DNA of 64,000 bases from Malacoraja senta (taxonomy: Eukaryota): NCBI GenBank assembly GCA_038087875.1, contig CM075989.1, forward strand, positions 12,958,001 through 13,022,000, in the 5' to 3' direction. Shown here piece by piece: positions 49,607-63,870 of this stretch (position 1 is the first letter of the stretch; every line of letters begins with the position of its first letter). The notes beneath the pieces are model-generated. The model was not told where the DNA came from, did no database searches, and saw only the letters and a program-made list of their open reading frames with translations. The translations under genes were made by a program, and so were the position numbers.

Positions 49607-49770
49607 CCACTCATCCTCCTCAGCACCCTCTCCTCGGCTGCTGCCTTTATCCTCTTGCTCGTTTTTAGACTTTGTAGCAAATATATTGTCTGTCCAAGAA
49701 TTTCCTGCCTTTTTATCACCTGCAAAGTTGCATTTGGTCACAGTTCCTGCATCCAATTTGGCCACTGTAA
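49607..49770 (-). CDS. ARPIN: Arpin, exon 5
   Basis: 164 bp; (L)TVAKLDAGTVTKCNFAGDKKAGNSWTDNIFATKSKNEQEDKGSSRGEGAEEDEW; gtaagt donor. Confidence 0.96.
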
Positions 49771-49829
49771 CTGAAAATCAAGTACTTGCATTACTGGAGA
49801 GCACTGCACACCCTCCTGTATTTCAATCT

Positions 49830-50450
49830 TTGTATCATCAGGTTTGCTGATGATACAAAGATAGGTGGAGGGACAAGTGGTGTTGAAGAAGTCAGTAGTC
49901 TACAGAAGAGTGTGGACAGTTTGGGAGAGTGGGCAAAGAAGAGGCAAATGGAATACAGCGCAGCAAGGTTTACGGTTAGTCCTTTGGTAGAAGGAATAAA
50001 GGCATAAACTACTTTCTAAATGGGGAGAGGATTCAGAAATCAGAGACGCGAAGGGACTTGGGAGTGCAGGATTTCCCAAAATGTTAATTTGCAGGTTGAG
50101 TCAGTGGTAAGGAAGGCATATGCAATGCTAGCATTTATTTTGAAGAGACTAGAATATAAAAGCAAGGATGTAGTGCTGGGGCTTTATAAGGCATTGGTAA
50201 GGCCACATTTGGAATATTGCAAATAGTATTAGGCCCCATATCTGAGGAAGGATATGCTGACGTTGGATAGGGTACAGAAGTGGTTTACAAGAATGATCCC
50301 GGAGATGATAGTAAAGGTTCAGAAGAAAATGGATCAAATGCAGGCAAGTGAAGCTCGTTTATGGGAAGGCACCTTGCTCAGCATGAACAGGTTGGGCAGA
50401 AGGACCTATTTCCAGGCTGTATAACTGCCTGCATTTATATGTTCTATGAT
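49830..50450 (+). mobile_element. CR1 LINE remnant
   Basis: RFADDTKIGG, VVRKAYAMLAFI, LYKALVRPHLEYC. Confidence 0.8.
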
Positions 50451-51187
50451 CACTTCTAATTTACCCATCTCTGTGAGAAGTTCCACGCACCTCAGTTTTA
50501 AATGACCGCCCCCATATCTTATAACTATGTTCCCTCGATCAAGACTCTGCCCTTTGTGGTAACATGTCAACATCTGCACTGCCGAGTCCTCTCAGGATCT
50601 TTCGTGTTTTGATAAAATCACCACTCATTCTTCTGATGACCACGAATACCTGATCTAACTTCTGTGTCATTGCAACTGTCCCATCTCAGAAATTAGCCTG
50701 GGAAAAGTATTTTGGATAGCCCACAATGTTCCTGAATTTTTTTCTTAAATAAGAGGACCAATATACAGAGTGGTGCACAATAATTGGATGAGGTTTTGGG
50801 GAAATAAGGAGATGTTTCTCACCTAGAAGCTGGTGGGACTTTGGAAGTTGCCTCCTGGGAGTCTCCTCCTGGGACCTCCCTCCTGGGAGGTGGGACAGTC
50901 GGAACCCCCCCCCCCCCCCCGACCCCCCAAAGATGAATTAACTAGCAGCTGGATGTGTACTTGAAAAGCTCTGACTGGCAGGGTTGTGAACCTGGTGCAG
51001 AAAGTGGGACCAAGCCATTAGGTTGACTAGCATGGAAATAATGGCAAACGTCCAACCATTAAGGTTCCGTGATAACATTTCAGTAGTAAATTGTCTGGGA
51101 CAATCTGGTGACAGTGAGAAGTTCTGGCGAATATCCAGTTTTATCTTTCAGATCCAAAACCAGCCAATTCCACAGCGCAGTACTTAC

Positions 51188-51394
51188 GGATAAATGGGCT
51201 GTCGCCCTGCGTTTTCAGACGCAATGCATCTCCAACGTCCAGCTCAATGTTTCCCATCTCTTCTTCAGTGATCCAAAATGCAAGACTTTGGTCTGGGGTG
51301 TGTTGCTCGGAGATCTGCACCAGCTCTGGTTTGTAAATCAACTTCTTCAACTCTTCTGTCGAAATCTTATCCGACTGTCCTTTAGCTTCCACCT
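51188..51394 (-). CDS. ARPIN: Arpin, exon 4
   Basis: 207 bp; (K)VEAKGQSDKISTEELKKLIYKPEL...LAFWITEEEMGNIELDVGDALRLKTQGDSPFI. Confidence 0.96.
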
Positions 51395-52587
51395 CTGTCA
51401 CATGATATAACAAAGGGGAAAGAGAAAACAAAGGCCAAATTAGTCTCAACATTTTGCTTCAGGTAACTGCCCTCTATGGGCCCCTTAACCTCACCAAGTT
51501 TACAAGCATTCGTTTACCACTTAACAACCAGAGAATTGGGTGCAGAAGATTCCACAAGCAAATAGCAGGAATAAGCCACTTGCCTCCTAAAACCTGCCCT
51601 TGCCTTCATTATGATCATTGCTGATATATGCTGGCCCAATTCTACTTCTGTGCCAGTTCCACATAACCCACACTTCCATGATCTTTCAATTATTTCTCTA
51701 CATATAAATATCTTCCACCTTAAATATACCTAATGACCCAGCCTTCACCACCTGAGAGTTCCAGAGATTCACCACCTTTTTGGAGAAGACATCTCTACAC
51801 TTCTTAGTTTTAAATGACCACCCCCTTATTTTGGATCGGTGTCCTCTTGTTTGTAATTTTCCAACTAGAAAACAAATCCCAACATCTACCCTATCCAGTT
51901 AGGCCAGACTGTCTCTTCCAACGAAATCTCCTCTTCTGGTATATCTATTAATTCCTAAGTAAGAACATCCACCTTTAGGTATAGAGGTGCACGATACTCA
52001 ATGAGGGTAAGTGCTGATCTTGCCAGCAATGCTCATATCCCATAATTGGTGCAAAATTATTTTTGACTGTTTCTGATAAACCAGTACCCTCTGTACACCA
52101 ATGTATCCAGGTCCTCCCCAGCTTTACAACAAATACCTGGATTGTGGACAACCCATACATACGAGTGAGTTTTTGGAGACCAGTGGGACGGGCTTGCTGG
52201 CTGCTGCGGAACTACAGGTATCTTCTGCCGGTTGGGAATAGGGCATTTACATGCACCTTCACCTCCACACATCCCCACTGAGTCAAGCAGCACTGGGAAT
52301 GCTGCATAAACTCACATGACTCATTGAGAGCTGTGCTCTGAGCCTTGCAGAGCTGTGTCTGTTCATTTACAACTTACAAACAGATCTCAGGAACAGAACT
52401 CTGTCGTAATCTGCGGACTTCCTGAACTTAGTTCCTCTTCATTTAAAAATCCCACTTTCCATTAAAGTTTATAATATCAGATTAAGTATATCTGCCAACC
52501 TCTTGCCCACTCACCTGACCTGTCCAGATCCTTCACAGACTTGTTGTATCCTCACAGCTCATTTTCCAACCTTGCCTTGGATATGTT

Positions 52588-52883
52588 ATAGAAACATAGA
52601 AACATAGAAAATAGGTGCAGGAGGAGGCCATTCGGCCCTTCGAGCCAGCACCGCCATTCATTGTGATCATGGCTGATCGTCCTCTATCAATAACCCGTGC
52701 CTGCCTTCTCCCCATATCCCTTGACTCCACTAGCCCCTAGAGCTCTATCTAACTCTCTCTTAAATCCATCCAGTGACTTGGCCTCCACTGCCCTCTGTGG
52801 CAGGGAATTCCATAAATTCACAACTCTCTGGGTGAAAAAGTTTTTTCTCACCTGTCTTAAATGACCTCCCCTTTATTCTAAGA
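52588..52883 (-). mobile_element. Young CR1 3' fragment
   Basis: (gaaacata)n tail; FFTQRVVNLWNSLPQRAVEA on the minus strand. Confidence 0.88.
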
Positions 52884-53487
52884 TTATATTGATATATTCT
52901 AAGGTTATATTGATATCTCATCAGTCAATAATATAAACTAGGAAAAGCTGAGGTTGGAACCCATCACTGCGGCATCACAAGTAATAGCCTGCCAAACCGG
53001 AAATAATAATTGGTGGTTTTCTGTCCTCAAACCAATCCTCTGTAACTACAAATGTTATATCTAATGCCTCATCAGATGCCCTTGAAACTCCAAGGTCTCA
53101 AGGGAACCGATTGTTCACTACTCTGCCCATTCCAGACCTCTTAGGTTTGAACTCCTCCAATCCCAACTATCACATGAAATAAAAAAATCAGCAGATGAGG
53201 ATCATGTGGAGATAATAGAATAATCAGGTGAATAACATCGTAACAGTGAACAATGAAAAATGTGAGCCAATGTGAGAACAGCGTAGAGAGGGGAGGAGGC
53301 AGAAAGGCCTGTTCTGGGGTAGCAACAAAGAGATCTTGAATGGCACGTGGTGGTGGGGCCATCTGAGAGGATGGGGAAGGGTACTGTGACAGACAATGGG
53401 TGTACTTGCAAGCCAGCAGCCTGCTAAAAATGTGTTTTAAAACTAGCTGGATTCAGCTCTCCATTAGAGGCCACCAAACAATCACAT

Positions 53488-53723
53488 TGTAGCGGGGACT
53501 CACAGGAGTCCAGCCAAGAATTAGTCGTGATCGAACGTATTTATTACTACTTCAGTGCTGCTCCCTACTCCAACAACGTGCACGAGCGTTACCCGACCTT
53601 TACCCGACCTTAAACCCAGGGCCAGGCCCCGTGACCCTATGCCTCCCATTCCGAGACGCTCAACCCCTCCCTCCTGAGCCGAGGGTTCGCTATGCCTGTG
53701 GCCAGCCACCAGGTGCCGCCACA
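53488..53723 (-). mobile_element. Solo LTR (Gypsy-type), 236 bp
   Basis: TG...CA ends with short inverted termini tgtagcgg/ccgccaca; 4-bp TSD acat (53484-53487, 53724-53727); AATAAA on the minus strand at ~53541. Confidence 0.8.
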
Positions 53724-53924
53724 ACATTTCCAATATTTCCCATTTTCATTAATTGATGGTGAAATCTGGTTTAAAGGTGTCAGAACTATGCAGCACAATA
53801 TAAAAGCTGGTGTACTGGACATCTAGGATTCAGGGAAGCCAATCTCACTTTTGGAGAAGTGGCGAGGAATTTCGAATTAGAGATCGAAACAGTGGGAAAA
53901 TGCAATGTAGTTCTTCTTGGTGCA

Positions 53925-54200
53925 TCTGGCAGAGCTCCTGCCTCACAGCTTCAGCAACCCAAGTTCAATCTGCATCTCTGGTGTTCAGTGCTAGTTTGCA
54001 TAATCTGCCTGTGACCATGAGGATTTCCTCCTGTGCTCTCACGTCCCAAAAACACGCAGGTTAAATAATCCTTTAACTGGCTCCAAGTATATTGGTAAGT
54101 GGTAGAATCTGCTGGGAATTCTTGGGAATGTGGAGAAAATAGGTTGCAGGGAAAACAAATAAGGAGAATGAAATGGCTCATTGAGCCTGCTTAGACTCAA
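53925..54200 (+). mobile_element. Old tRNA-headed SINE
   Basis: gcctcacagc...acccaagttcaatc B-box-like head and gtgaccatgaggatttcctcc body. Confidence 0.55.
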
Positions 54201-54407
54201 ATTTGCAAAGAGATATGGAAATATAGCAAGGTTAAGAGGACATCAAATGAGAGACATGAAAGTCACTGACATTTATTGGGAGATGGGGACCTCTCCCAAA
54301 GAATCATTGACTCTGATACTCAAAGTATAAGAAGGGTATTTGCCCCCCGAGGTGGACCCCATTTAATGAGATAGCGGCTCAATTGCAACCTAACTCTCTG
54401 TACTCAC

Positions 54408-54540
54408 TGAAGGATGACATTAAGTATCCAGTGTTGACTTTCTTGGTTTCACTGAAGTTTGGTTCAATCTCCACTCCCTCAGAATCAAACTTTCTTTTGT
54501 GGATTTTCGTTGGCTTAATATACAGAATGAAGTAACGGTA
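54408..54540 (-). CDS. ARPIN: Arpin, exon 3
   Basis: 133 bp; YRYFILYIKPTKIHKRKFDSEGVEIEPNFSETKKVNTGYLMSSF. Confidence 0.97.
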
Positions 54541-56001
54541 CTGAAAAAGATGCAAAAAATTCAACATGGTAAGGTAATACATATTTGATTACTTACGTAT
54601 TAATAGAAACACTTAAACAATTATGAATTATGGTAATTACATTTGCATTTTTCGGACTGCTATTCATGGCTTTAACATGGACATCCTGAACTTCGCAATG
54701 ACATCACTGGCCGGCAGGAGAAAGTACAAAATTGGCCAGAAACGAGGCAGGTGCTTCAGCACAGTCAAATTAAAGGGAATGTTCTGTAACAGAGGCCAGG
54801 CCCATCCTCCAAATCACCAGGGACAGGTGAAGATTCCGCAGGTTGAGACACTTGATGCAACTCTGCAAAGGTGGCCCTCAGGATGAAATCCACAACGGGT
54901 ACCTTTCTGCAGGCTCTCTCTGAACACCTACATTTCACACCCCAAACGATGGATCCACCTAGGATCTCCAGATGAAATGGAAGATAGCCTGGTGACTGCC
55001 GTGAGAGGCTTAAAGGCCACACCTGCTCAGCACTCATGCTTCTGCTCAGACCAGCCTCCGATTATTGCCATTCGTTCGCAGCTTCATTACTTGATCTTAA
55101 CCAGTCCTCGCTGCACTTTTCCTCTGGCATCCCCTCCCCAACATAGCCAGCACTCTCCCACTAACTCCCACACAATCCAGGAGGGGCTGACTCTACACCA
55201 CTTGGCCCTAAATTACCATATAGGGGGGCTGCACGTAAGGTCATCGGGTCAAAGGGCATGATGCCGGAGCAGCTCATTCCATGTGGAGGACATGACAGCT
55301 TCCGGCACACACTGTTAACACACAGAATGCGTACCTTCTTACCTGTTAAAAAATGCTAAAATTGTCATTTTTTGTGCTATAAATATTTGTGGGTGCTGTC
55401 ATTGAAAGTGGGAAGGTTTGCTCTGAACCCGAGCACCAAGGTGTAAGCAGCCGAAGGAGCGCATCCCTCGGGACAGCTCCCACTCTCCCACCCGGGTCAG
55501 CGCTGTCCGGCCACAGCTGCCCTCCGCCCCGTCTCCCTCTGTGTGCCGCACTATCACGGGGCTGTGGGTCGGCAGTGCCCACACACGGGGCCGGGTGGAG
55601 CAAGGCCGAGGCCGCGGCTCCAGGCAATGTCAGCTGCAGCAGAGTTGGGGACAGTCTGCTCCCTCCGCCCACCAAGTCACTGACCGTGCTGCATCGGCAC
55701 CCCGACCTTTTCCGACCCCCTCCTCCTCCTCCCACCCCTGGCCGGGGGGATAGAGGGCCTGGGGTCCGCGGGTGTGCAACCAGTCCGGGTGCAGGGCTAG
55801 AAGGGCCGGCTGTGCTGACAGCCATAGTAAATGCTTACCTGCAGTTCACCGCGTGTACTCCAGTTGGCGTTGCATGGCAACAGTACGGGTCATGGGTCGT
55901 GACCTTGACTGCGTGCAACCTCCCTATAATCCCCCAACATTATCACACCGCTACCCCAGAATCGTCCCCATCCAAGTACCGACACCGACGGACCCGCTCA
56001 C

Positions 56002-56077
56002 CTTGCTGTCGGTCTCGTCCTCGATCTGATGCCGGGTCACCAGCAGTAGTTCCCCTTCCAGCACCGCACCGGGACCA
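56002..56077 (-). CDS. ARPIN: Arpin, exon 2
   Basis: 76 bp; (C)GPGAVLEGELLLVTRHQIEDETDSK; gtgagc donor. Confidence 0.93.
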
Positions 56078-56374
56078 CTGTAAACATATACCAAGTCAGT
56101 GTGGCTCAATGATACTTCGTTGTCACATGTACCTAGGTACAATGAAATACTTTGTTTTGCATAGAACCCGGTAAATTAGTCGCCGCGTTTCTGGCACTGA
56201 CAAAGTTATAAAAAGTTCACCGGGCATTCCTGTCTTCTGTGTAACAAGGAACTGAAGATGCTAGTTTACACCTTAGACACAAAATGTTGGAGTAACTCAG
56301 CGGGACAGGCAGCATCTCGGGAGAAAAGGAAAAGGAAAAGGAAGGTTCTCGACCCGAAACACAAACTATTCTAT

Positions 56375-56800
56375 CTCTGAACATCCAGGTTCAGGAATAG
56401 CTACTTCCCCACAGCCATCAGGCTATTAAACTCAAATGAAACAAAACTCTGAACATTAATAGACCATTATCTGTCTATTTGCACTTTATCTGTTTATTTA
56501 TTCATGTGTGCATATATTTATATAAGGGTATATGGACACACTGATCTGTTCTGTATTCAAGTTCAAGAAGGAACTGCAGATGCTGGAAAAACAAAGGTAG
56601 ACAAAAAGGCTGGAGAAACTCAGCGGGTGAGGCAGCATCTGTGGAACGAAGGAAATAGGCAACGTTTTGGGCCGAAACCCTAGTTCAGACTGATCAAGTT
56701 TCAGTTCTGTATTCAATCATGCCTGTGCTGTTCTGTTGTGCTGAAGCAAAGTAAGAATTTCATTGTTCTATCTAGGACACATGACAATAATCTCTCTTGA
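56375..56800 (+). mobile_element. Rex1/Babar-type LINE 3' end
   Basis: RFRNSYFPTAIRLLN, then 3' UTR ending gaatttcattgt...acatgacaataa; similar tails at ~5830, ~17850, ~35130 and ~61980. Confidence 0.7.
56561..56703 (-). mobile_element. 143-bp pLTR/hammerhead insertion nested in the Rex tail
   Basis: 13-bp TSD gttctgtattcaa (56548-56560, 56704-56716). Confidence 0.75.
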
Positions 56801-56928
56801 ATCACCAGAGGTGCTGCCTGTCCCCCTGAGTTACTCCAACAGATTGTATCCTATCTTCCCGCCTGCGGCCGTATGTGGCGGGCAGCGCTAAGCCCCCAGA
56901 CCCCCCCCCCCCCCCCCGGGAGCCTCAC

Positions 56929-57029
56929 CATGGTGTCCGTGTGGCAGTGGCCGGAGTCCAGCAGCCGGGGAGCCGCTGTCGATGCACCGGGCCGACCCGC
57001 AGCCGCTCGTCGCTGTAGATGCGGCTCAT
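56929..57029 (-). CDS. ARPIN: Arpin, exon 1
   Basis: ATG at 57029; MSRIYSDERLRVGPVHRQRLPGCWTPATATRTP plus 2 nt (human starts MSRIYHDGALR..V...RLPG.W); gtgagg donor. Confidence 0.92.
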
Positions 57030-57277
57030 CGTCCGACTCAAAGATCCTCTTTGGTCCGACCCAAAGATACTAGAGGAACAAGATAGACCACTCGACGAAA
57101 AAGCCGCAGTACGGTCATGGGATCATGGGTAATTTTTTTGCGCCATTTTGGCAATCAAATATATGAGGTTTTTTTTTAATGGGCTTCTGTCAATGGCGTC
57201 CACATAGTAGCTTTGGTCCGACCGGAAGCTGAAAAGGCTTACGGCGGAAACTAGTCGATCGCCCAGGTAACGGCGCC
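57030..57277. promoter_or_regulatory. Bidirectional promoter between ARPIN and AFG2B within a CpG island (~56870-58500)
   Basis: 248 bp between divergent ATGs; YY1-type cgccattttg (57141-57150) and ETS-type accggaag (57221-57228). Confidence 0.8.
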
Positions 57278-58354
57278 ATGGAGGGGCCGGAGCTGCGGCT
57301 GTTGCCGCCCGATGCTCGGGACCGCGGCTCCCAGCGATGCCGCCTGGGGCCCCGGGCTCTGGCAGCGCTGGCCGTGCGCCTCGGTGCCCCGCTGCGGGTG
57401 TGCGTGGCCGGTGGCCTGGCCCTCTGCTCCGCCTGGCCCCGGGCTGACCGCGCCGACGGTTTCGTGCAGCTGGACACCAAGTGCGCCAGCCCGGGCTTCC
57501 CCGACAGCGCGGCCCGAGGCCTAAGCCTGGGCATCGGGCAGTTGCAGCCCGTCGGCTGCAGTAGGGCCCGGCGGGTGTGTGTGCGGGCGGTGGTGGCGGC
57601 GGCGCGGCCCGACGGCCCCGAGCCTCCGTCCCCGCTCCCACTGATCCGCGGCCTGCTGAAGGGCGTCTACCTGAGCGCCGGGCTGGTGGTGCGGGTGGCA
57701 GGCCCAGAGGCCTCGGCCTGTCCCGGCGCCTTGCTCCAGCTCGAGGTCGTCTGGCTGGATCCACCGGCCGCCGGGGCCGCTCTGTTAGCGGCAGGTGCAG
57801 AGGTGCAGGTGGCTGAGGTGCTGAGTTTGGATCAGTACCGGGCCGAGAGCCGAGCCCCGCCCGAGGCTCCGGGGCCGGGACCCGAGCCTGTTCTCACCTC
57901 CCTGCGGGAGGCGCTGGCCTGGCCGCTCCTCTACCCCAAGACGTCGGCGCGCCTGGGCCTGGACTGCCCGCGGGGCGTGCTGCTGCTCGGGCCATCAGGC
58001 GTGGGCAAGACCCGGCTGCTACACTGCCTGGCCCGGGAGCTGGGCGCCACGGTGCTGGAGGCCTCAGCCTCGGCCTTGCTCGGGCCGCGGCCCGGGGACA
58101 GCGAGCGCCGTCTCCGGCGTCTCTTTGGGCGGGCCGCGGCCGAGCGTCGGCCTTGCCTGCTCTTCATCGACCAGTTGGACGCCGTGTTTTCCCGCAGGGC
58201 GGGTCGGAGCCAGGGCGCTGAGCACCGGCTGTTAGCTCAGCTCCTCTGCCTGCTCGACGGGCAGGACCGCAGGCCGTTCGTGTTAGTGGCCGCCACGGAC
58301 AGACCCGACGCATTGGACCCCGCACTGAGGAGGCCAGGACGATTTGATCGGGAG
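57278..58354 (+). CDS. AFG2B: AAA ATPase AFG2B (SPATA5L1), exon 1: N domain and D1
   Basis: gccATGG Kozak; LLP.DARDRG.QRCRLGP...C.AWPR.D.ADGFVQLD..CASPG N-terminus; Walker A GPSGVGKT; DPALRRPGRFDRE|gtgagg; 359 codons. Confidence 0.96.
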
Positions 58355-58699: not shown

Positions 58700-59460
58700 G
58701 TTTATTTAGAGTCGTACAGCACCCAAACGGCCCTTTGGTCCAGTGTGTCCAGCCGAGATGTTTGCCCATCTAAAATAATACGGCTATATTTCGTAATACA
58801 ACTCCTTACCCCCACGACTGAATAGCTGTGAAAAGTTCCCAGCATATGATTGATGCAAATGTGGCAGATGATAGTTTCTCATGAGTCAGGAGTATTTTAT
58901 TGTCATATGATTTCATTTACAGCTAATACGCTCTCATCCAGGCAACATCCTCGTGAACCTCTTCAGTGTCTTCCAAAGCCTCCATATCCATTCTGTAATG
59001 CGGTGACCAGAACTGTACATGATACTCCAAATGTGGTCGAAACAAAGTTTTATGCAGCTGCAACTTGACTTTGTGGCTATTATACTCCATGTCCCAACGC
59101 TAAAGGCAAACATGCTTCCACCTTCTTTACCACCATGTCTGCTTGTGTTGTCATCTGCAGGGAGCTATGGATTTGTATCCCCTCAATACTGCTAAGGACC
59201 CCGCTATTTATTATATACTTTCTCCTTTCAAAATGCACACCTCGCATCTACGTATTAGGCTCCATCTACCATTTCTTCACCCACATCGCCAACAGCTTTA
59301 TTTCCTCGTGAATCTTTGAAAACTCCCATAGTTTTTGTGTCATCAGTAAACTTGCTAAATCGGTCTGTTTACATTTTTATTCAAATTGTTTATATACATC
59401 ACAAACAGCAAAGTTCCCAACACCAACACCTGCGAAACACCATTGAACACCACCCTGGAA
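58700..59460 (-). mobile_element. Old CR1 LINE remnants
   Basis: Minus strand SKFTDDTK, L.KT.VRPHLEY.VQFWSPHYR.D...LE. Confidence 0.65.
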
Positions 59461-59739: not shown

Positions 59740-59925
59740 ATCACAATCGGAGTCCCTACTATGTTGCAACGCCAATCCATTTTGGAAGCGGTCACTGCCC
59801 CGATGCCTCTGAGCACTGATGTTAATGTGTCCTGGCTGGCGGAAGCAACAAGTGGCTACGTTGGGGCTGACCTGACAGCCCTGTGTCGAGAGGCCGCACT
59901 GCAGGTCATCAGGCGCAGTTCCCAG
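59740..59925 (+). CDS. AFG2B: AFG2B exon 2
   Basis: 186 bp; ITIGVPTMLQRQSILE...LAEATSGYVGADLTALCREAALQVIRRSSQ; cag/gtatgg. Confidence 0.95.
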
Positions 59926-62190: not shown

Positions 62191-62349
62191 GGCTCGGTGA
62201 AGCTGCAGATTACACTGGCAGACTTCCAGGAAGCGCTGAAGATCGTGTTCCCTTCCTCTCTGCGGAGCAGCATTGGCCTGACTGACTTCAGACCCGTGCC
62301 CTGGGACCAGGTCGGAGGTTTGGATGATATCAAGTTGAAACTAAGGCAG
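62191..62349 (+). CDS. AFG2B: AFG2B exon 3
   Basis: 159 bp; [53 protein letters not shown]; aag/gtaaag. Confidence 0.92.
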
Positions 62350-62542
62350 GTAAAGTTCATCAAACCCTTCCCCATCTGCTTCAAACCAATTTAATTCTCC
62401 CTCTGCTGCTCTTTCTCTCTTTGTGCATCCCTATCATTCTGAGATTTCTGTATGTGTTTCCCTCTATACGTGTCTCTGTCTCTCTCCCTTTTGCTCTCTG
62501 TCTCTCAGCAGAGTTTGACCACTTTGGCATTGCTTCTGGCAG

Positions 62543-62752
62543 AGTGTCGAGTGGCCACTGATGTACCCGGAAGCGTTTGTGAGGATGGGACTGATGCCTT
62601 GTCGGGGTATCCTCCTGTATGGACCACCAGGATGTGCAAAGACCACGTTGGTGAAGGCCACGGCCTCCAGCTGCCGGTGCTCCTTGCTGTCGGTCAGTGG
62701 GGCTGAGCTCTTCTCCCCCTTTGTGGGTGATTCTGAAAAGGCGTTGTCTGAG
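62543..62752 (+). CDS. AFG2B: AFG2B exon 4 (D2 Walker A)
   Basis: 210 bp; [16 protein letters not shown]...[19 protein letters not shown]...[22 protein letters not shown] is characteristic of SPATA5L1 rather than SPATA5 (GCSKT). Confidence 0.96.
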
Positions 62753-62981
62753 GTGAGCATTTACTGTCCTCTGCTCCGGGCTGACTATGTTGTGAGTCAT
62801 TGCAACGTGGACCTCATTTTCGGCAGTAAAGTATTTGCTGCATATTCCTTGGGTAATCAATGCTCATAATGTGATAGATATGATACAGTCCCTTTATATT
62901 TGGAGGAATTTGGCCATCCACTGTCCAGCTGCTTGCTCGTTCCGTGTGACTGTCTACTGGTTGGCTGGCCCCATCCCTATT

Positions 62982-63181
62982 NNNNNNNNNNNNNNNNNNN
63001 NNNNNNNNNNNNNNNNNNNNNNNNNNNNNNNNNNNNNNNNNNNNNNNNNNNNNNNNNNNNNNNNNNNNNNNNNNNNNNNNNNNNNNNNNNNNNNNNNNNN
63101 NNNNNNNNNNNNNNNNNNNNNNNNNNNNNNNNNNNNNNNNNNNNNNNNNNNNNNNNNNNNNNNNNNNNNNNNNNNNNNNNN
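62982..63181. other. Assembly gap (200 N placeholder) hiding AFG2B exons
   Basis: D2 Walker B and SRH coding sequence is missing between exon 4 and the next visible exon. Confidence 1.
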
Positions 63182-63248
63182 CCTGAAGGAGCTAGGAACA
63201 GTGACCGCAGGATTTACTGGAGCAGATTTACAGAATTTGTGCAAGGAG
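63182..63248 (+). CDS. AFG2B: AFG2B, 3' part of a late (probably penultimate) exon
   Basis: LKELGTVTAGFTGADLQNLCKE|gtgagt, the D2 lid motif. Confidence 0.88.
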
Positions 63249-63870
63249 GTGAGTCTGCGCTGACAGCATGGGATTGTAGTGGCCGGATTGGGAGTCAGGC
63301 CAGGGCTTTCACTCTGTGTATCAAGTGAGGGTTTACAAGCAGTCATTATCAGGGCAGCCAAACAGGGAAAGGGCAAAAATGTAAAAACAAACTCTTTAAA
63401 GGGAAATAGAGATGTATTTTAGATTTTGAGTGAACAGAGAAATGTGGATTGTGGTGCAGGTCAGACAAGGCTGGAGCTACATGTATCTTAAACTAGCAAA
63501 GCAATGCTGAGTTGGAACCATAAGTGTCCTCAGACGTCAGACACTGCGGTGAGTTTGTCATGCCGTTAGTTTATAATGCCTCGTCCCATGGGCAGTATAA
63601 CTGCTTACGTGGGATGTGAACCTCGATGGGGAAATTGGCAGATGCATTCAGTTTGCTGAAACACAGCAAGAGAACTGTAACTCTACTGTCTGCTTACCTG
63701 TGGTGAGTGCACAGGTTGAGGTGGTGGAACTCACTAATCGCTGCTGCTGTGTTATGGTGAAACAGACATTTTCTTGAGGCATTTACTGTGGTGCCTTTTG
63801 CTATCACAACACATCCTCTAGCCATTGCAATACTTTGCAAATCTACTGAAGTCCTCTGTATATCTGTATA

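What the first reader, a model, noticed from the sequence alone, without database searches (positions are those of the whole stretch)
57850..58354. AFG2B D1 ATPase site carries both Walker B E->Q and sensor-1 N->D
Seen: Walker B reads LLFIDQLD (CAG at 58172-58174, Q299) and sensor 1 reads AATDRPD (GAC at 58298-58300, D341). The GGL motif that normally precedes D1 is replaced by PGPGPE, while Walker A (GPSGVGKT) and the arginine fingers (LRRPGRFD) are intact. Established: classic AAA domains, including human SPATA5L1 D1 as I recall it, have hhhhDE and ATNRP; E->Q is the standard engineered hydrolysis-dead trap; the Walker B Glu and sensor-1 Asn both position the catalytic water; AFG2B works in a heterohexamer with AFG2A/SPATA5 in 60S maturation. 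Inference: either D1 is a natural ATP-binding, non-hydrolysing module in this lineage, or the reciprocal acid/amide swap has moved the catalytic base to sensor 1. Two complementary changes in an otherwise open 359-codon exon are unlikely to both be base-call errors.
Basis: partly seen in the sequence, partly recalled or inferred. Interest (0 to 1): 0.72.

Follow-up and report, generated by a model that had tools for sequence, protein, structure and literature searches.

The report
Ray AFG2B lost its D1 catalytic residues
In this skate, and in every ray and skate checked, the first ATPase site of the ribosome-maturation factor AFG2B carries a natural glutamate-to-glutamine "hydrolysis-dead" change plus a sensor-1 Asn-to-Asp change, most likely leaving a site that binds ATP without burning it; a known kind of degeneration, not a new catalytic mechanism.

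Summary
Window 57278-58354 (+) is exon 1 (359 codons) of the AFG2B/SPATA5L1 orthologue. It reads D298-Q299 (CAG 58172-58174) at Walker B and T340-D341 (GAC 58298-58300) at sensor 1. Human AFG2B has DE and TN there.

It is not a base-call error. The same two codons occur in a skate transcript contig and in the Pristis and Narcine genomes. The same residues occur in all 12 batoid sequences, which span four orders.

Nine galeomorph sharks read DD at Walker B, with Ser or Asn at sensor 1. The chimaera and 108 bony-vertebrate sequences all keep the Walker B Glu, and 106 of them read E/N. D2 is canonical wherever it can be read.

Batoid D1 is under purifying selection (dN/dS about 0.2). A burst of change on the elasmobranch and batoid stems is confined to the exon-1-encoded domains and has a GC-rich amino-acid signature.

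Engineered SPATA5L1 E304Q and yeast Drg1 E346Q are tolerated. NSF D2 and PEX1 D1 are natural precedents.

Best reading: an ATP-binding, non-hydrolysing assembly site. The acid/amide "swap" gets no comparative support but is not excluded.

The parts
57278..58354 (+). AFG2B/SPATA5L1 exon 1: N-domain (residues 1 to about 195), linker, and D1 alpha/beta subdomain (about 205-359)
   Evidence: ORF. phmmer E=1e-98 to human AFG2B chains. Pfam AAA at residues 234-359. Spliced match to transcript L001 ending at 58354. Foldseek top hits are the SPATA5L1 chains of 9lgo.
57869..57886 (+). PGPGPE in place of the GGL/GGM/AGL that precedes helix alpha0 of D1
   Evidence: Alignments: all batoids lack the GG(L/M); sharks, chimaera and bony vertebrates keep it. 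AF2 pLDDT is below 50 at residues 192-202.
57989..58012 (+). D1 Walker A, GPSGVGKT (K244 intact; the P-to-S change is skate-specific)
58082..58105 (+). D1 pore-loop-1 region, GPRPGDSE; no aromatic residue, as in human SPATA5L1
   Evidence: PMC12019325: the D1 pore loop I of SPATA5L1 lacks an aromatic residue, with R274 at that position.
58157..58174 (+). D1 Walker B, LLFIDQ; Q299 (CAG 58172-58174) replaces the catalytic Glu
58253..58261 (+). LDG at the position that I take from memory to be the inter-subunit-signalling (ISS) DG motif. The Gly is kept in skates but is S or N in other batoids and some sharks, and a one-residue deletion follows in batoids
   Evidence: alignment. DG is invariant in the chimaera and bony vertebrates shown.
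58289..58300 (+). D1 sensor-1 segment, AATD; D341 (GAC 58298-58300) replaces Asn
   Evidence: In the AF2 model D341 directly follows strand beta4 (334-340) and Q299 directly follows beta3 (293-298).
58325..58348 (+). LRRPGRFD carrying the two arginine fingers (R352, R355). These act in trans on the neighbouring subunit's site
   Evidence: Invariant in all sequences.
59740..59925 (+). Exon 2: D1 lid subdomain
   Evidence: Transcript alignment. Pfam AAA_lid_3, E=5.5e-15.
62191..62349 (+). Exon 3: D1-D2 linker and start of D2. The 3' boundary is uncertain by up to 5 nt
   Evidence: ORF translation.
62538..62754 (+). Exon 4: D2 Walker A (GPPGCAKT) and aromatic pore loop (SPFVGDSE). The 5' boundary is uncertain by up to 5 nt
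62983..63181 (.). Run of N that hides the stretch where the D2 Walker B and sensor-1 exon(s) would lie.
   Evidence: Transcript positions 2354-2776 of L001 find no match in the window.
63182..63249 (+). Partial exon: D2 lid (…TGADLQNLCKE)

Best explanation
This is the single, syntenic AFG2B (SPATA5L1) gene of a skate. Its D1 nucleotide site has lost the two residues that handle the attacking water: the Walker B Glu is now Gln and the sensor-1 Asn is now Asp. It keeps what is needed to bind Mg-ATP (Walker A Lys/Thr, Walker B Asp) and to serve the neighbouring subunit (both Arg fingers).

The most likely working is that D1 of AFG2B binds ATP, probably tightly, and holds it. It would act as a structural and assembly element of the 4:2 AFG2A:AFG2B hexamer. 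The work of extracting RLP24 from pre-60S particles would be done by the D2 sites and by AFG2A.

Shown here: the residues are present, they are fixed in all batoids sampled, D1 is under purifying selection, and D2 is canonical in the relatives.

Inferred: ATP is still bound and hydrolysis is lost.

The history is probably as follows. Exon 1 became extremely GC-rich in the elasmobranch ancestor. A burst of substitutions followed in the two domains it encodes. Because hydrolysis at this site is dispensable, the Glu and Asn were lost independently, as Q/D in batoids and D/S in most sharks. The new state was then conserved.
For: Identity and orthology: phmmer E=1e-98 to human AFG2B; Foldseek top hits are SPATA5L1 chains; the neighbours are shared with the Narcine, Pristis, Carcharodon and Chiloscyllium loci (Arpin upstream in all four; a cation-efflux/ZnT gene downstream in Narcine); the gene tree follows the species tree.

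Fixation: Q+D occurs in 12 of 12 batoid sequences from Rajiformes, Torpediniformes, Rhinopristiformes and Myliobatiformes, with identical CAG and GAC codons in four sources including a transcript contig.

Lineage pattern: sharks read DD plus S or N. The chimaera and 106 bony-vertebrate sequences read E/N, and two more read E/S. In Chiloscyllium the codons are GAC GAC and AAC. At nucleotide level an E/N ancestor with independent single-step losses is the most parsimonious history.

Constraint: dN/dS of D1 among batoids is 0.12-0.27. Walker A Lys, Walker B Asp and the Arg fingers are invariant. D2 reads LFLDEID and AATNRPD in every batoid and shark.

Burst: D1 alpha/beta branch lengths are 0.42 on the elasmobranch stem and 0.47 on the batoid stem, against 0.12 for the whole chimaera branch. 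The D1 lid shows no excess. The GARP amino-acid fraction rises and FYMINK falls only in the exon-1-encoded domains. Exon 1 has GC 0.74 and GC3 0.84.

Literature: human SPATA5L1 E304Q lowers complex ATPase but has only minor effects on RLP24 release, and all six D1 sites hold ATP in an inactive configuration (PMC12019325). [quoted passage not shown] NSF D2 naturally has Asp at this position (D604Q mutant, PMC2120109). PEX1 D1 has LDN or LDD and is thought to keep binding nucleotide for assembly (PMC9265785). The DnaA sensor-1 residue D269 is described as important for stable nucleotide binding (PMC4245941, citing Kawakami 2006).
Against: There are no biochemical data for any elasmobranch protein.

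The human E304Q complex did show reduced ATPase (PMC12019325), so this site is active in humans and its loss is a real change.

Batoids also lost the GG(L/M) before helix alpha0, which in related AAA sites contacts the adenine through the backbone. ATP binding itself could therefore be weakened.

Strict retention of exactly Q and exactly D across four orders could mean these residues are doing something specific. With only two sites and a slowly evolving crown group, this is weak evidence either way.

E-to-Q mutants of some AAA proteins keep residual hydrolysis.

The window's own D2 Walker B cannot be read because of the N run. No squalomorph shark was sampled.
Confidence: 0.62

Rival explanations
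1. Relocated catalytic base. Asp341 on the sensor-1 strand activates the water while Gln299 takes over the hydrogen-bonding role of the lost Asn, so D1 still hydrolyses ATP.
For: The exchange conserves charge (E/N to Q/D). Both residues sit at the tips of adjacent strands beta3 and beta4 in the model. Both are invariant across all batoids, with unchanged codons, and D1 is under purifying selection. From memory, not tested here: in some other ASCE P-loop NTPases (RecA/F1 type) the catalytic acid is not next to the Walker B Asp.
Against: Q+D arose once, so the co-occurrence is one event. Sharks lost the same Glu to Asp with Ser or Asn at sensor 1. The orphan AFG2B-like P0037 has Q+S. In 150 Cdc48-family representatives, domains that lost the Glu mostly lost the Asn to V, H, R, S or E, which shows generic co-decay. 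The only literature precedent found for a sensor-1 Asp concerns nucleotide binding, not catalysis. N-to-D (AAC to GAC) is also the direction favoured by the exon's GC pressure.
Confidence: 0.08
2. D1 no longer binds nucleotide usefully and is only a scaffold. Loss of the GG(L/M) adenine contact, the P-to-S change in Walker A (skates) and the acidic sensor-1 residue together disable binding as well as hydrolysis.
For: All batoids lack GG(L/M). The residues around the position I take to be the ISS motif are eroded. AF2 confidence is low at 192-202.
Against: GxxGxGK[TS] is invariant in every elasmobranch, and the Walker B Asp and the hydrophobic beta3 strand are intact. dN/dS is about 0.2 in the D1 alpha/beta subdomain, lower than in the N-domain. 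Human D1 sites are all ATP-occupied.
Confidence: 0.13
3. Purely non-adaptive decay driven by GC-biased substitution in exon 1, with no settled new function. On this view the site is still drifting and Q/D are retained only because batoids evolve slowly.
For: Acceleration and the GARP enrichment are confined to the exon-1-encoded domains. GC3 is 0.79-0.95. Same-site, different-residue replacements in sharks and batoids occur at many otherwise conserved D1 columns.
Against: Crown-group rates are low and dN/dS is about 0.2. E-to-Q and E-to-D are G-to-C changes, which are GC-neutral. This account explains how the residues were lost rather than what the domain does now, so it largely complements the best explanation.
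Confidence: 0.12
4. Artefact: sequencing error, pseudogene or retrocopy.
For: None beyond the oddity of the residues.
Against: The codons are the same in four independent sources including a transcript contig. The reading frame is open with conserved splice sites. The locus is syntenic and intron-containing. D1 is under purifying selection.
Confidence: 0.01

Closest known systems
Human AFG2B/SPATA5L1 D1 in the 55LCC / SPATA5 complex (PDB 8RHN, 9LGO)
   Same: Orthologue with the same N-D1-D2 layout, 46-47% identity over exon 1, the same non-aromatic D1 pore loop, and the same Walker A and Arg fingers. The engineered E304Q is exactly the batoid Walker B state and only mildly affects RLP24 release.
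   Different: Human has DE at Walker B and Asn at sensor 1 (N345 by my count in the alignment), and its D1 site contributes measurable ATPase. Batoids carry Q and D naturally and lack the preceding GGL.
Yeast Drg1/Afg2 D1
   Same: A type II AAA protein of the same subfamily. The D1 Walker B E346Q mutant is viable, and D1 is described as a high-affinity ATP site that supports hexamer formation.
   Different: Drg1 is a homohexamer with canonical D1 residues (D345/E346, N390). The dead state is engineered, not natural.
NSF D2
   Same: A natural AAA domain with Asp instead of Glu after the Walker B Asp, as shown by the D604Q mutant name. PMC9646744 lists it as the high-affinity ATP site that facilitates nucleotide-dependent hexamer formation. 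This matches the shark DD state.
   Different: A different protein and a different ring (D2). No sensor-1 Asp is known to me.
PEX1 (and PEX6) D1
   Same: A heterohexameric type II AAA whose D1 ring has Walker B LDN or LDD and is considered inactive in hydrolysis, with the Walker A Lys kept for assembly.
   Different: PEX1/6 D1 also lost the Arg fingers and pore-loop motifs, across eukaryotes. In elasmobranch AFG2B the Arg fingers are intact and the loss is restricted to one vertebrate subclass.
DnaA sensor-1 Asp (D269)
   Same: An AAA+ protein with Asp at sensor 1. The residue is described as important for stable nucleotide binding.
   Different: DnaA belongs to the initiator clade and is a remote relative with a different Walker B context. 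It is an analogy only.

Membership tests
AFG2B / SPATA5L1 orthologue group | Best sequence match, over the full length of exon 1 including the N-domain, is to AFG2B rather than to AFG2A, p97 or NVL | tested here: met
   AFG2B chains score E=1e-98 and cover residues 2-359. AFG2A, p97 and NVL match only residues 200-359, at about E=1e-62; named AFG2B/SPATA5L1 proteins are the top hits for the Narcine orthologue.
AFG2B / SPATA5L1 orthologue group | N-domain + D1 + D2 type II AAA architecture | tested here: met
   Exons for the N-domain with D1 alpha/beta, the D1 lid, the D2 Walker A and the D2 lid lie in order in the window. The middle of D2 is hidden by the N run. Full architecture is seen in the 97%-identical skate proteins.
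AFG2B / SPATA5L1 orthologue group | Single-copy syntenic locus; gene tree congruent with species tree | tested here: met
   Arpin lies head-to-head upstream in the window, Narcine, Pristis, Carcharodon and Chiloscyllium. A ZnT-like gene lies downstream in Narcine. ML tree.
AFG2B / SPATA5L1 orthologue group | D1 pore loop I without an aromatic residue (Arg at that position in human) | tested here: met
   G-P-R-P-G-D-S-E in the window, against G-S-R-P-G-E-(S/T)-E in other vertebrates. PMC12019325.
Hydrolysis-competent classic AAA site | Walker B hhhhDE, with Glu as the catalytic base | tested here: not met
   D298-Q299.
Hydrolysis-competent classic AAA site | Sensor-1 Asn at the tip of beta4 | tested here: not met
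   D341.
Hydrolysis-competent classic AAA site | Walker A GxxGxGK[ST] | tested here: met
   GPSGVGKT.
Hydrolysis-competent classic AAA site | Trans-acting arginine fingers supplied by the neighbouring subunit (AFG2A or AFG2B) | not testable with these tools
   AFG2B's own fingers are intact, but they serve the neighbour's site. The batoid AFG2A partner was not retrieved.
Degenerate, nucleotide-binding but non-hydrolysing AAA domains (NSF D2, PEX1 D1 type) | Catalytic Glu absent while the Walker A Lys and Walker B Asp are kept under constraint | tested here: met
Degenerate, nucleotide-binding but non-hydrolysing AAA domains (NSF D2, PEX1 D1 type) | ATP bound but not turned over | not testable with these tools
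   Needs biochemistry or cryo-EM of a batoid complex.

The most novel reading that the evidence does not exclude
In batoids the catalytic acid of a classic AAA site has moved from the Walker B strand to the sensor-1 strand (E/N to Q/D). D1 of AFG2B would then still hydrolyse ATP through Asp341, which would be a natural example of active-site rewiring in the AAA family.
Probability: 0.07. Interest if true: 0.75.

Novelty: new variant of a known kind. Interest (0 to 1): 0.36.

Why it matters
Rays, skates and sharks provide a long-running natural experiment: vertebrates in which the AFG2B D1 site lacks its catalytic glutamate. In batoids the state is exactly the E-to-Q "trap" mutation used in the laboratory.

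This supports, from evolution, what mutagenesis of human SPATA5L1 and yeast Drg1 suggests. Hydrolysis at this site is not needed for the essential job of the complex, whereas ATP binding, the arginine fingers and D2 are.

It also gives a clean example of catalytic residues lost during a GC-driven burst confined to one exon.

The practical value is modest. It guides which sites matter when SPATA5L1 disease variants are interpreted. It also offers natural sequences for testing whether a sensor-1 Asp tightens ATP binding.

Tried and rejected
1. Base-call error or pseudogene: rejected.

2. A skate-only oddity: rejected. All batoid orders share Q/D, and sharks also lack the Glu.

3. Correlated evolution as support for the swap: rejected. 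Q/D is a single event, the other lineages give D/S, D/N and Q/S, and co-loss is generic in the family.

4. A search for relatives of the orphan Q/S protein P0037, to gain an independent replicate, found nothing closer than 33-34% identity. It remains a single unplaced sequence.

5. Shark DNA for codon-level parsimony: files for Carcharodon, Mobula and S. torazame were too large, and Heterodontus was not on record. Only Chiloscyllium was obtained.

6. Earlier-findings look-ups returned nothing.

7. The AF2 model gives secondary structure and confidence only, not coordinates, so the Q299-D341 distance and the ATP pose could not be measured.

8. The batoid AFG2A partner was not retrieved. A search seeded with a generic vertebrate AFG2A would not have ranked batoids near the top, so I ran no further search on it.

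9. The first MAFFT run timed out and was repeated with faster settings.

Full report
**What is in the window**

An ORF opens at ATG 57278 and runs through 58354, where GAG|gtgagg marks a splice donor.

A 3.1-kb transcript contig from a closely related skate (Logan SRR11241626, locus L001, about 96% nucleotide identity) aligns in spliced blocks. Exon 1 ends exactly at 58354. Further exons lie at about 59740-59925, 62191-62349 and 62538-62754, with a fragment at 63182-63249 that abuts a run of N at 62983-63181. I left the N run alone, so the window's own D2 Walker B and sensor 1 cannot be read.

The exon-1 protein matches human AFG2B (SPATA5L1) chains 9lgo_F and 8rhn_O over residues 2-359 at E=1e-98. 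AFG2A, p97, NVL and Drg1 match only the AAA part. Pfam finds AAA at residues 234-359, and AAA_lid_3 in exon 2. An AlphaFold model (pLDDT 73) has SPATA5L1 chains of 9LGO as its best Foldseek hits.

The upstream head-to-head neighbour is Arpin. The same neighbour flanks the gene in Narcine, Pristis, Carcharodon and Chiloscyllium, and a ZnT-like gene lies downstream in Narcine. This is the single syntenic AFG2B gene of a skate. It is 97-98% identical in exon 1 to Amblyraja and Leucoraja, but identical to neither.

**The observation**

- CAG at 58172-58174 encodes Q299, directly after the Walker B Asp (LLFIDQLD).
- GAC at 58298-58300 encodes D341 (AATDRPD).
- Walker A is GPSGVGKT.
- LRRPGRFD is intact.
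- PGPGPE stands where other vertebrates have GGL, GGM or AGL.

Human AFG2B aligns LLFLDEMD and GATNRPD at these columns. In the model, Q299 directly follows strand beta3 (293-298) and D341 directly follows beta4 (334-340), the canonical places for the catalytic Glu and sensor 1.

**Not an error, and not confined to this species**

The codons at both positions are CAG and GAC in four sources: the window, the skate transcript contig, the Pristis pectinata genome and the Narcine bancroftii genome.

At protein level, all 12 batoid sequences have DQ and TD and lack the GG(L/M). They are:
- skates: the window, Amblyraja, Leucoraja and three Logan assemblies;
- the electric ray Narcine;
- the sawfish Pristis;
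- the stingrays and devil rays Hypanus, Hemitrygon and two Mobula species.

Nine galeomorph sharks all have DD at Walker B. They are Heterodontus, Carcharodon, Cetorhinus, two Scyliorhinus, Mustelus, Hemiscyllium and two Chiloscyllium. Their sensor 1 is Ser, except in the three hemiscylliids, which keep Asn. In Chiloscyllium the codons are GAC GAC and AAC.

The chimaera Callorhinchus has the canonical DE and TN. So do 106 of the 108 bony-vertebrate sequences in the sample. The two exceptions, Menidia and Hymenochirus, keep the Glu and have Ser at sensor 1.

D2 reads LFLDEID and AATNRPD in every batoid and shark.

**History**

The gene tree follows the species tree.

At nucleotide level, Glu (GAR) is one step from both Gln (CAG) and Asp (GAY), whereas Gln and Asp are two steps apart. 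Likewise Asn (AAY) is one step from Asp (GAY) and from Ser (AGY). The simplest history is an E/N elasmobranch ancestor with independent losses in batoids (to Q and D) and sharks (to D, then S). This is an inference; only one shark was checked at codon level.

Of 96 D1 alpha/beta columns conserved in the chimaera plus bony vertebrates, 34 are changed in elasmobranchs.
- Some changes are shared by sharks and batoids: V248L, V255L, I262A, C304F and D344E.
- At several columns the two groups carry different residues: 246, 264, 265, 277, 299, 310, 313 and 341.

With branch lengths re-estimated per domain on the fixed tree, the D1 alpha/beta subdomain shows 0.42 substitutions per site on the elasmobranch stem and 0.47 on the batoid stem. 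The whole chimaera branch shows 0.12. This is a 6- to 8-fold excess from the chondrichthyan ancestor. The other domains show about 1-fold for the D1 lid, 3- to 3.7-fold for D2 and 2.4- to 2.7-fold for the N-domain.

Within crown batoids the rate is low (0.12). Pairwise dN/dS for D1 is 0.12-0.27, lower than for the N-domain. The pattern is a burst followed by conservation, not continuing decay.

**A compositional driver**

The acceleration coincides with exon 1. In elasmobranchs the two exon-1-encoded domains are enriched in Gly, Ala, Arg and Pro. The GARP fraction is 0.43-0.47, against 0.20-0.38 in the chimaera and bony vertebrates. They are depleted in Phe, Tyr, Met, Ile, Asn and Lys. The D1 lid and D2, encoded by later exons, show no such shift.

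Exon 1 has GC 0.74 and GC3 0.84 in the window, and GC3 of 0.79-0.95 in the relatives. The flanking introns are at 42-50% GC.

The sensor-1 changes N-to-D and N-to-S are A-to-G changes, in the direction of this pressure. The Walker B changes are G-to-C and therefore GC-neutral.

I read this as GC-biased substitution, probably biased gene conversion at a promoter-proximal exon, raising the substitution load. Positions whose function was dispensable gave way. The mechanism is inferred, not tested.

**What the site probably does now**

The residues kept invariant are the Walker A Lys/Thr, the Walker B Asp, the hydrophobic beta3 strand and both Arg fingers. The Arg fingers act on the neighbour's site, so their conservation says nothing about AFG2B's own site.

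Published work on the same site fits a non-hydrolysing role:
- In the human complex (4 SPATA5 : 2 SPATA5L1 : 2 CINP : 2 C1orf109) all six D1 sites hold ATP in a configuration the authors call inactive.
- The SPATA5L1 D1 pore loop lacks an aromatic residue.
- SPATA5L1 E304Q lowers ATPase of the complex but has only a minor effect on RLP24 release, whereas SPATA5 D2 E-to-Q is the severe mutant (PMC12019325).
- In yeast, Drg1 E346Q does not affect growth while E617Q is lethal. D1 is grouped with p97 D1 and NSF D2 as a high-affinity site that supports hexamer formation (PMC9646744).

Natural precedents for the degenerate residues exist:
- NSF D2 has Asp at this position, as the D604Q mutant name shows (PMC2120109).
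- PEX1 D1 has LDN or LDD with a retained Walker A Lys (PMC9265785).
- The sensor-1 Asp of DnaA (D269) is described as important for stable nucleotide binding (PMC4245941, citing Kawakami et al. 2006).

The most likely working is therefore an ATP-binding, non-hydrolysing assembly site (confidence about 0.6).

Caveats:
- Batoids also lost the GG(L/M) that in related domains contacts the adenine.
- The Gly at the position I take, from memory, to be the inter-subunit-signalling DG motif is replaced in most non-skate batoids. Weakened binding is therefore possible.
- Nothing here was measured biochemically.

**The swap hypothesis**

The exchange conserves charge and the two residues are neighbours, so the idea is chemically reasonable.
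- Q and D co-occur only because they share one ancestor.
- Sharks lost the same Glu with Ser or Asn at sensor 1.
- An unplaced AFG2B-like protein (P0037) has Q with Ser. It has no relative closer than 33-34% identity.
- Among 352 AAA-domain matches (some partial, where an insertion split a domain) in 150 diverse Cdc48-family representatives, 301 are DE/N. The few complete domains without the Glu have sensor-1 D, S, V, H, R or E, and one keeps Asn. Joint loss is the general pattern of a retired site.

I put the swap at about 7-8%.

**Novelty and score**

Degenerate D1 or D2 rings are well known in type II AAA proteins. The dispensability of this particular site was already indicated by mutagenesis. 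What appears new is the natural, subclass-wide loss in elasmobranch AFG2B, with two different end states, and its link to an exon-limited GC-driven burst. My two literature searches on SPATA5L1 and Drg1 Walker B motifs were not aimed at elasmobranchs and turned up no report of it.

I rate it a new variant of a known kind, with interest about 0.36.

Noticed in passing
window 49641-57037 (exon blocks at 49641-49770, 51185-51394, 54408-54542, 56002-56078, 56929-57037), minus strand: The upstream neighbour is an Arpin gene (Pfam PF10574, E=2e-79 for the ORF on the reverse strand of L001), arranged head-to-head with AFG2B. The Logan contig L001 joins both genes. This is presumably an unstranded assembly merging overlapping 5' ends at a bidirectional promoter.
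   Followed up: partly
window 56929-57277: The 797-aa Amblyraja, Leucoraja and Logan proteins carry an extra N-terminal stretch of about 38-50 residues, read from an upstream exon spliced across 57038-57215. In this window that reading frame is closed by a stop upstream of ATG 57278. The conserved MEGP… start, shared with Narcine, Pristis and other vertebrates, is therefore the likely true start, and the longer models are probably over-extended.
   Followed up: partly
window 62983-63181: A run of 199 N lies inside the AFG2B gene, where the D2 Walker B and sensor-1 exon(s) are expected. About 420 nt of the related transcript (L001 2354-2776) have no match in the window.
   Followed up: no
window about 58850-59320, both strands: The first intron holds short ORFs with a …RPHLEYHVQFWSPHY… motif. 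It resembles, from memory, the C-terminal tail of LINE (CR1/L2-type) reverse-transcriptase ORFs common in cartilaginous fish. Not tested.
   Followed up: no
P0294 (Scyliorhinus torazame GCB77719, 885 aa; contig of 57 kb): This cat-shark AFG2B-like product is called from a gene span of only 2658 nt, which means no introns. The syntenic shark genes span 15-32 kb. It may be a retrocopy or an annotation or assembly artefact. The DNA could not be fetched.
   Followed up: no
P0037 (Logan, 762 aa) and P0106 (889 aa): Two other family members have degenerate first AAA domains. P0037 (AFG2B-like, organism unknown) has FFDQIE with ATSQP. P0106, whose length and match position suggest AFG2A, has IMDDVD with ATVNP. 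Both keep Walker A and the Arg fingers.
   Followed up: partly
P0233 (Menidia menidia) and P0250 (Hymenochirus boettgeri): These are the only two of 108 bony-vertebrate AFG2B sequences with a non-Asn sensor 1 in D1 (Ser). Both keep the Walker B Glu, so sensor 1 is somewhat more tolerant than the Glu.
   Followed up: no
window 57278-58354 against later exons: Exon 1 is 74% GC (GC3 84%) while its flanks and the later exons sit at 42-51%. In elasmobranchs the GARP-rich, FYMINK-poor amino-acid shift stops at the exon 1 / exon 2 boundary.
   Followed up: yes
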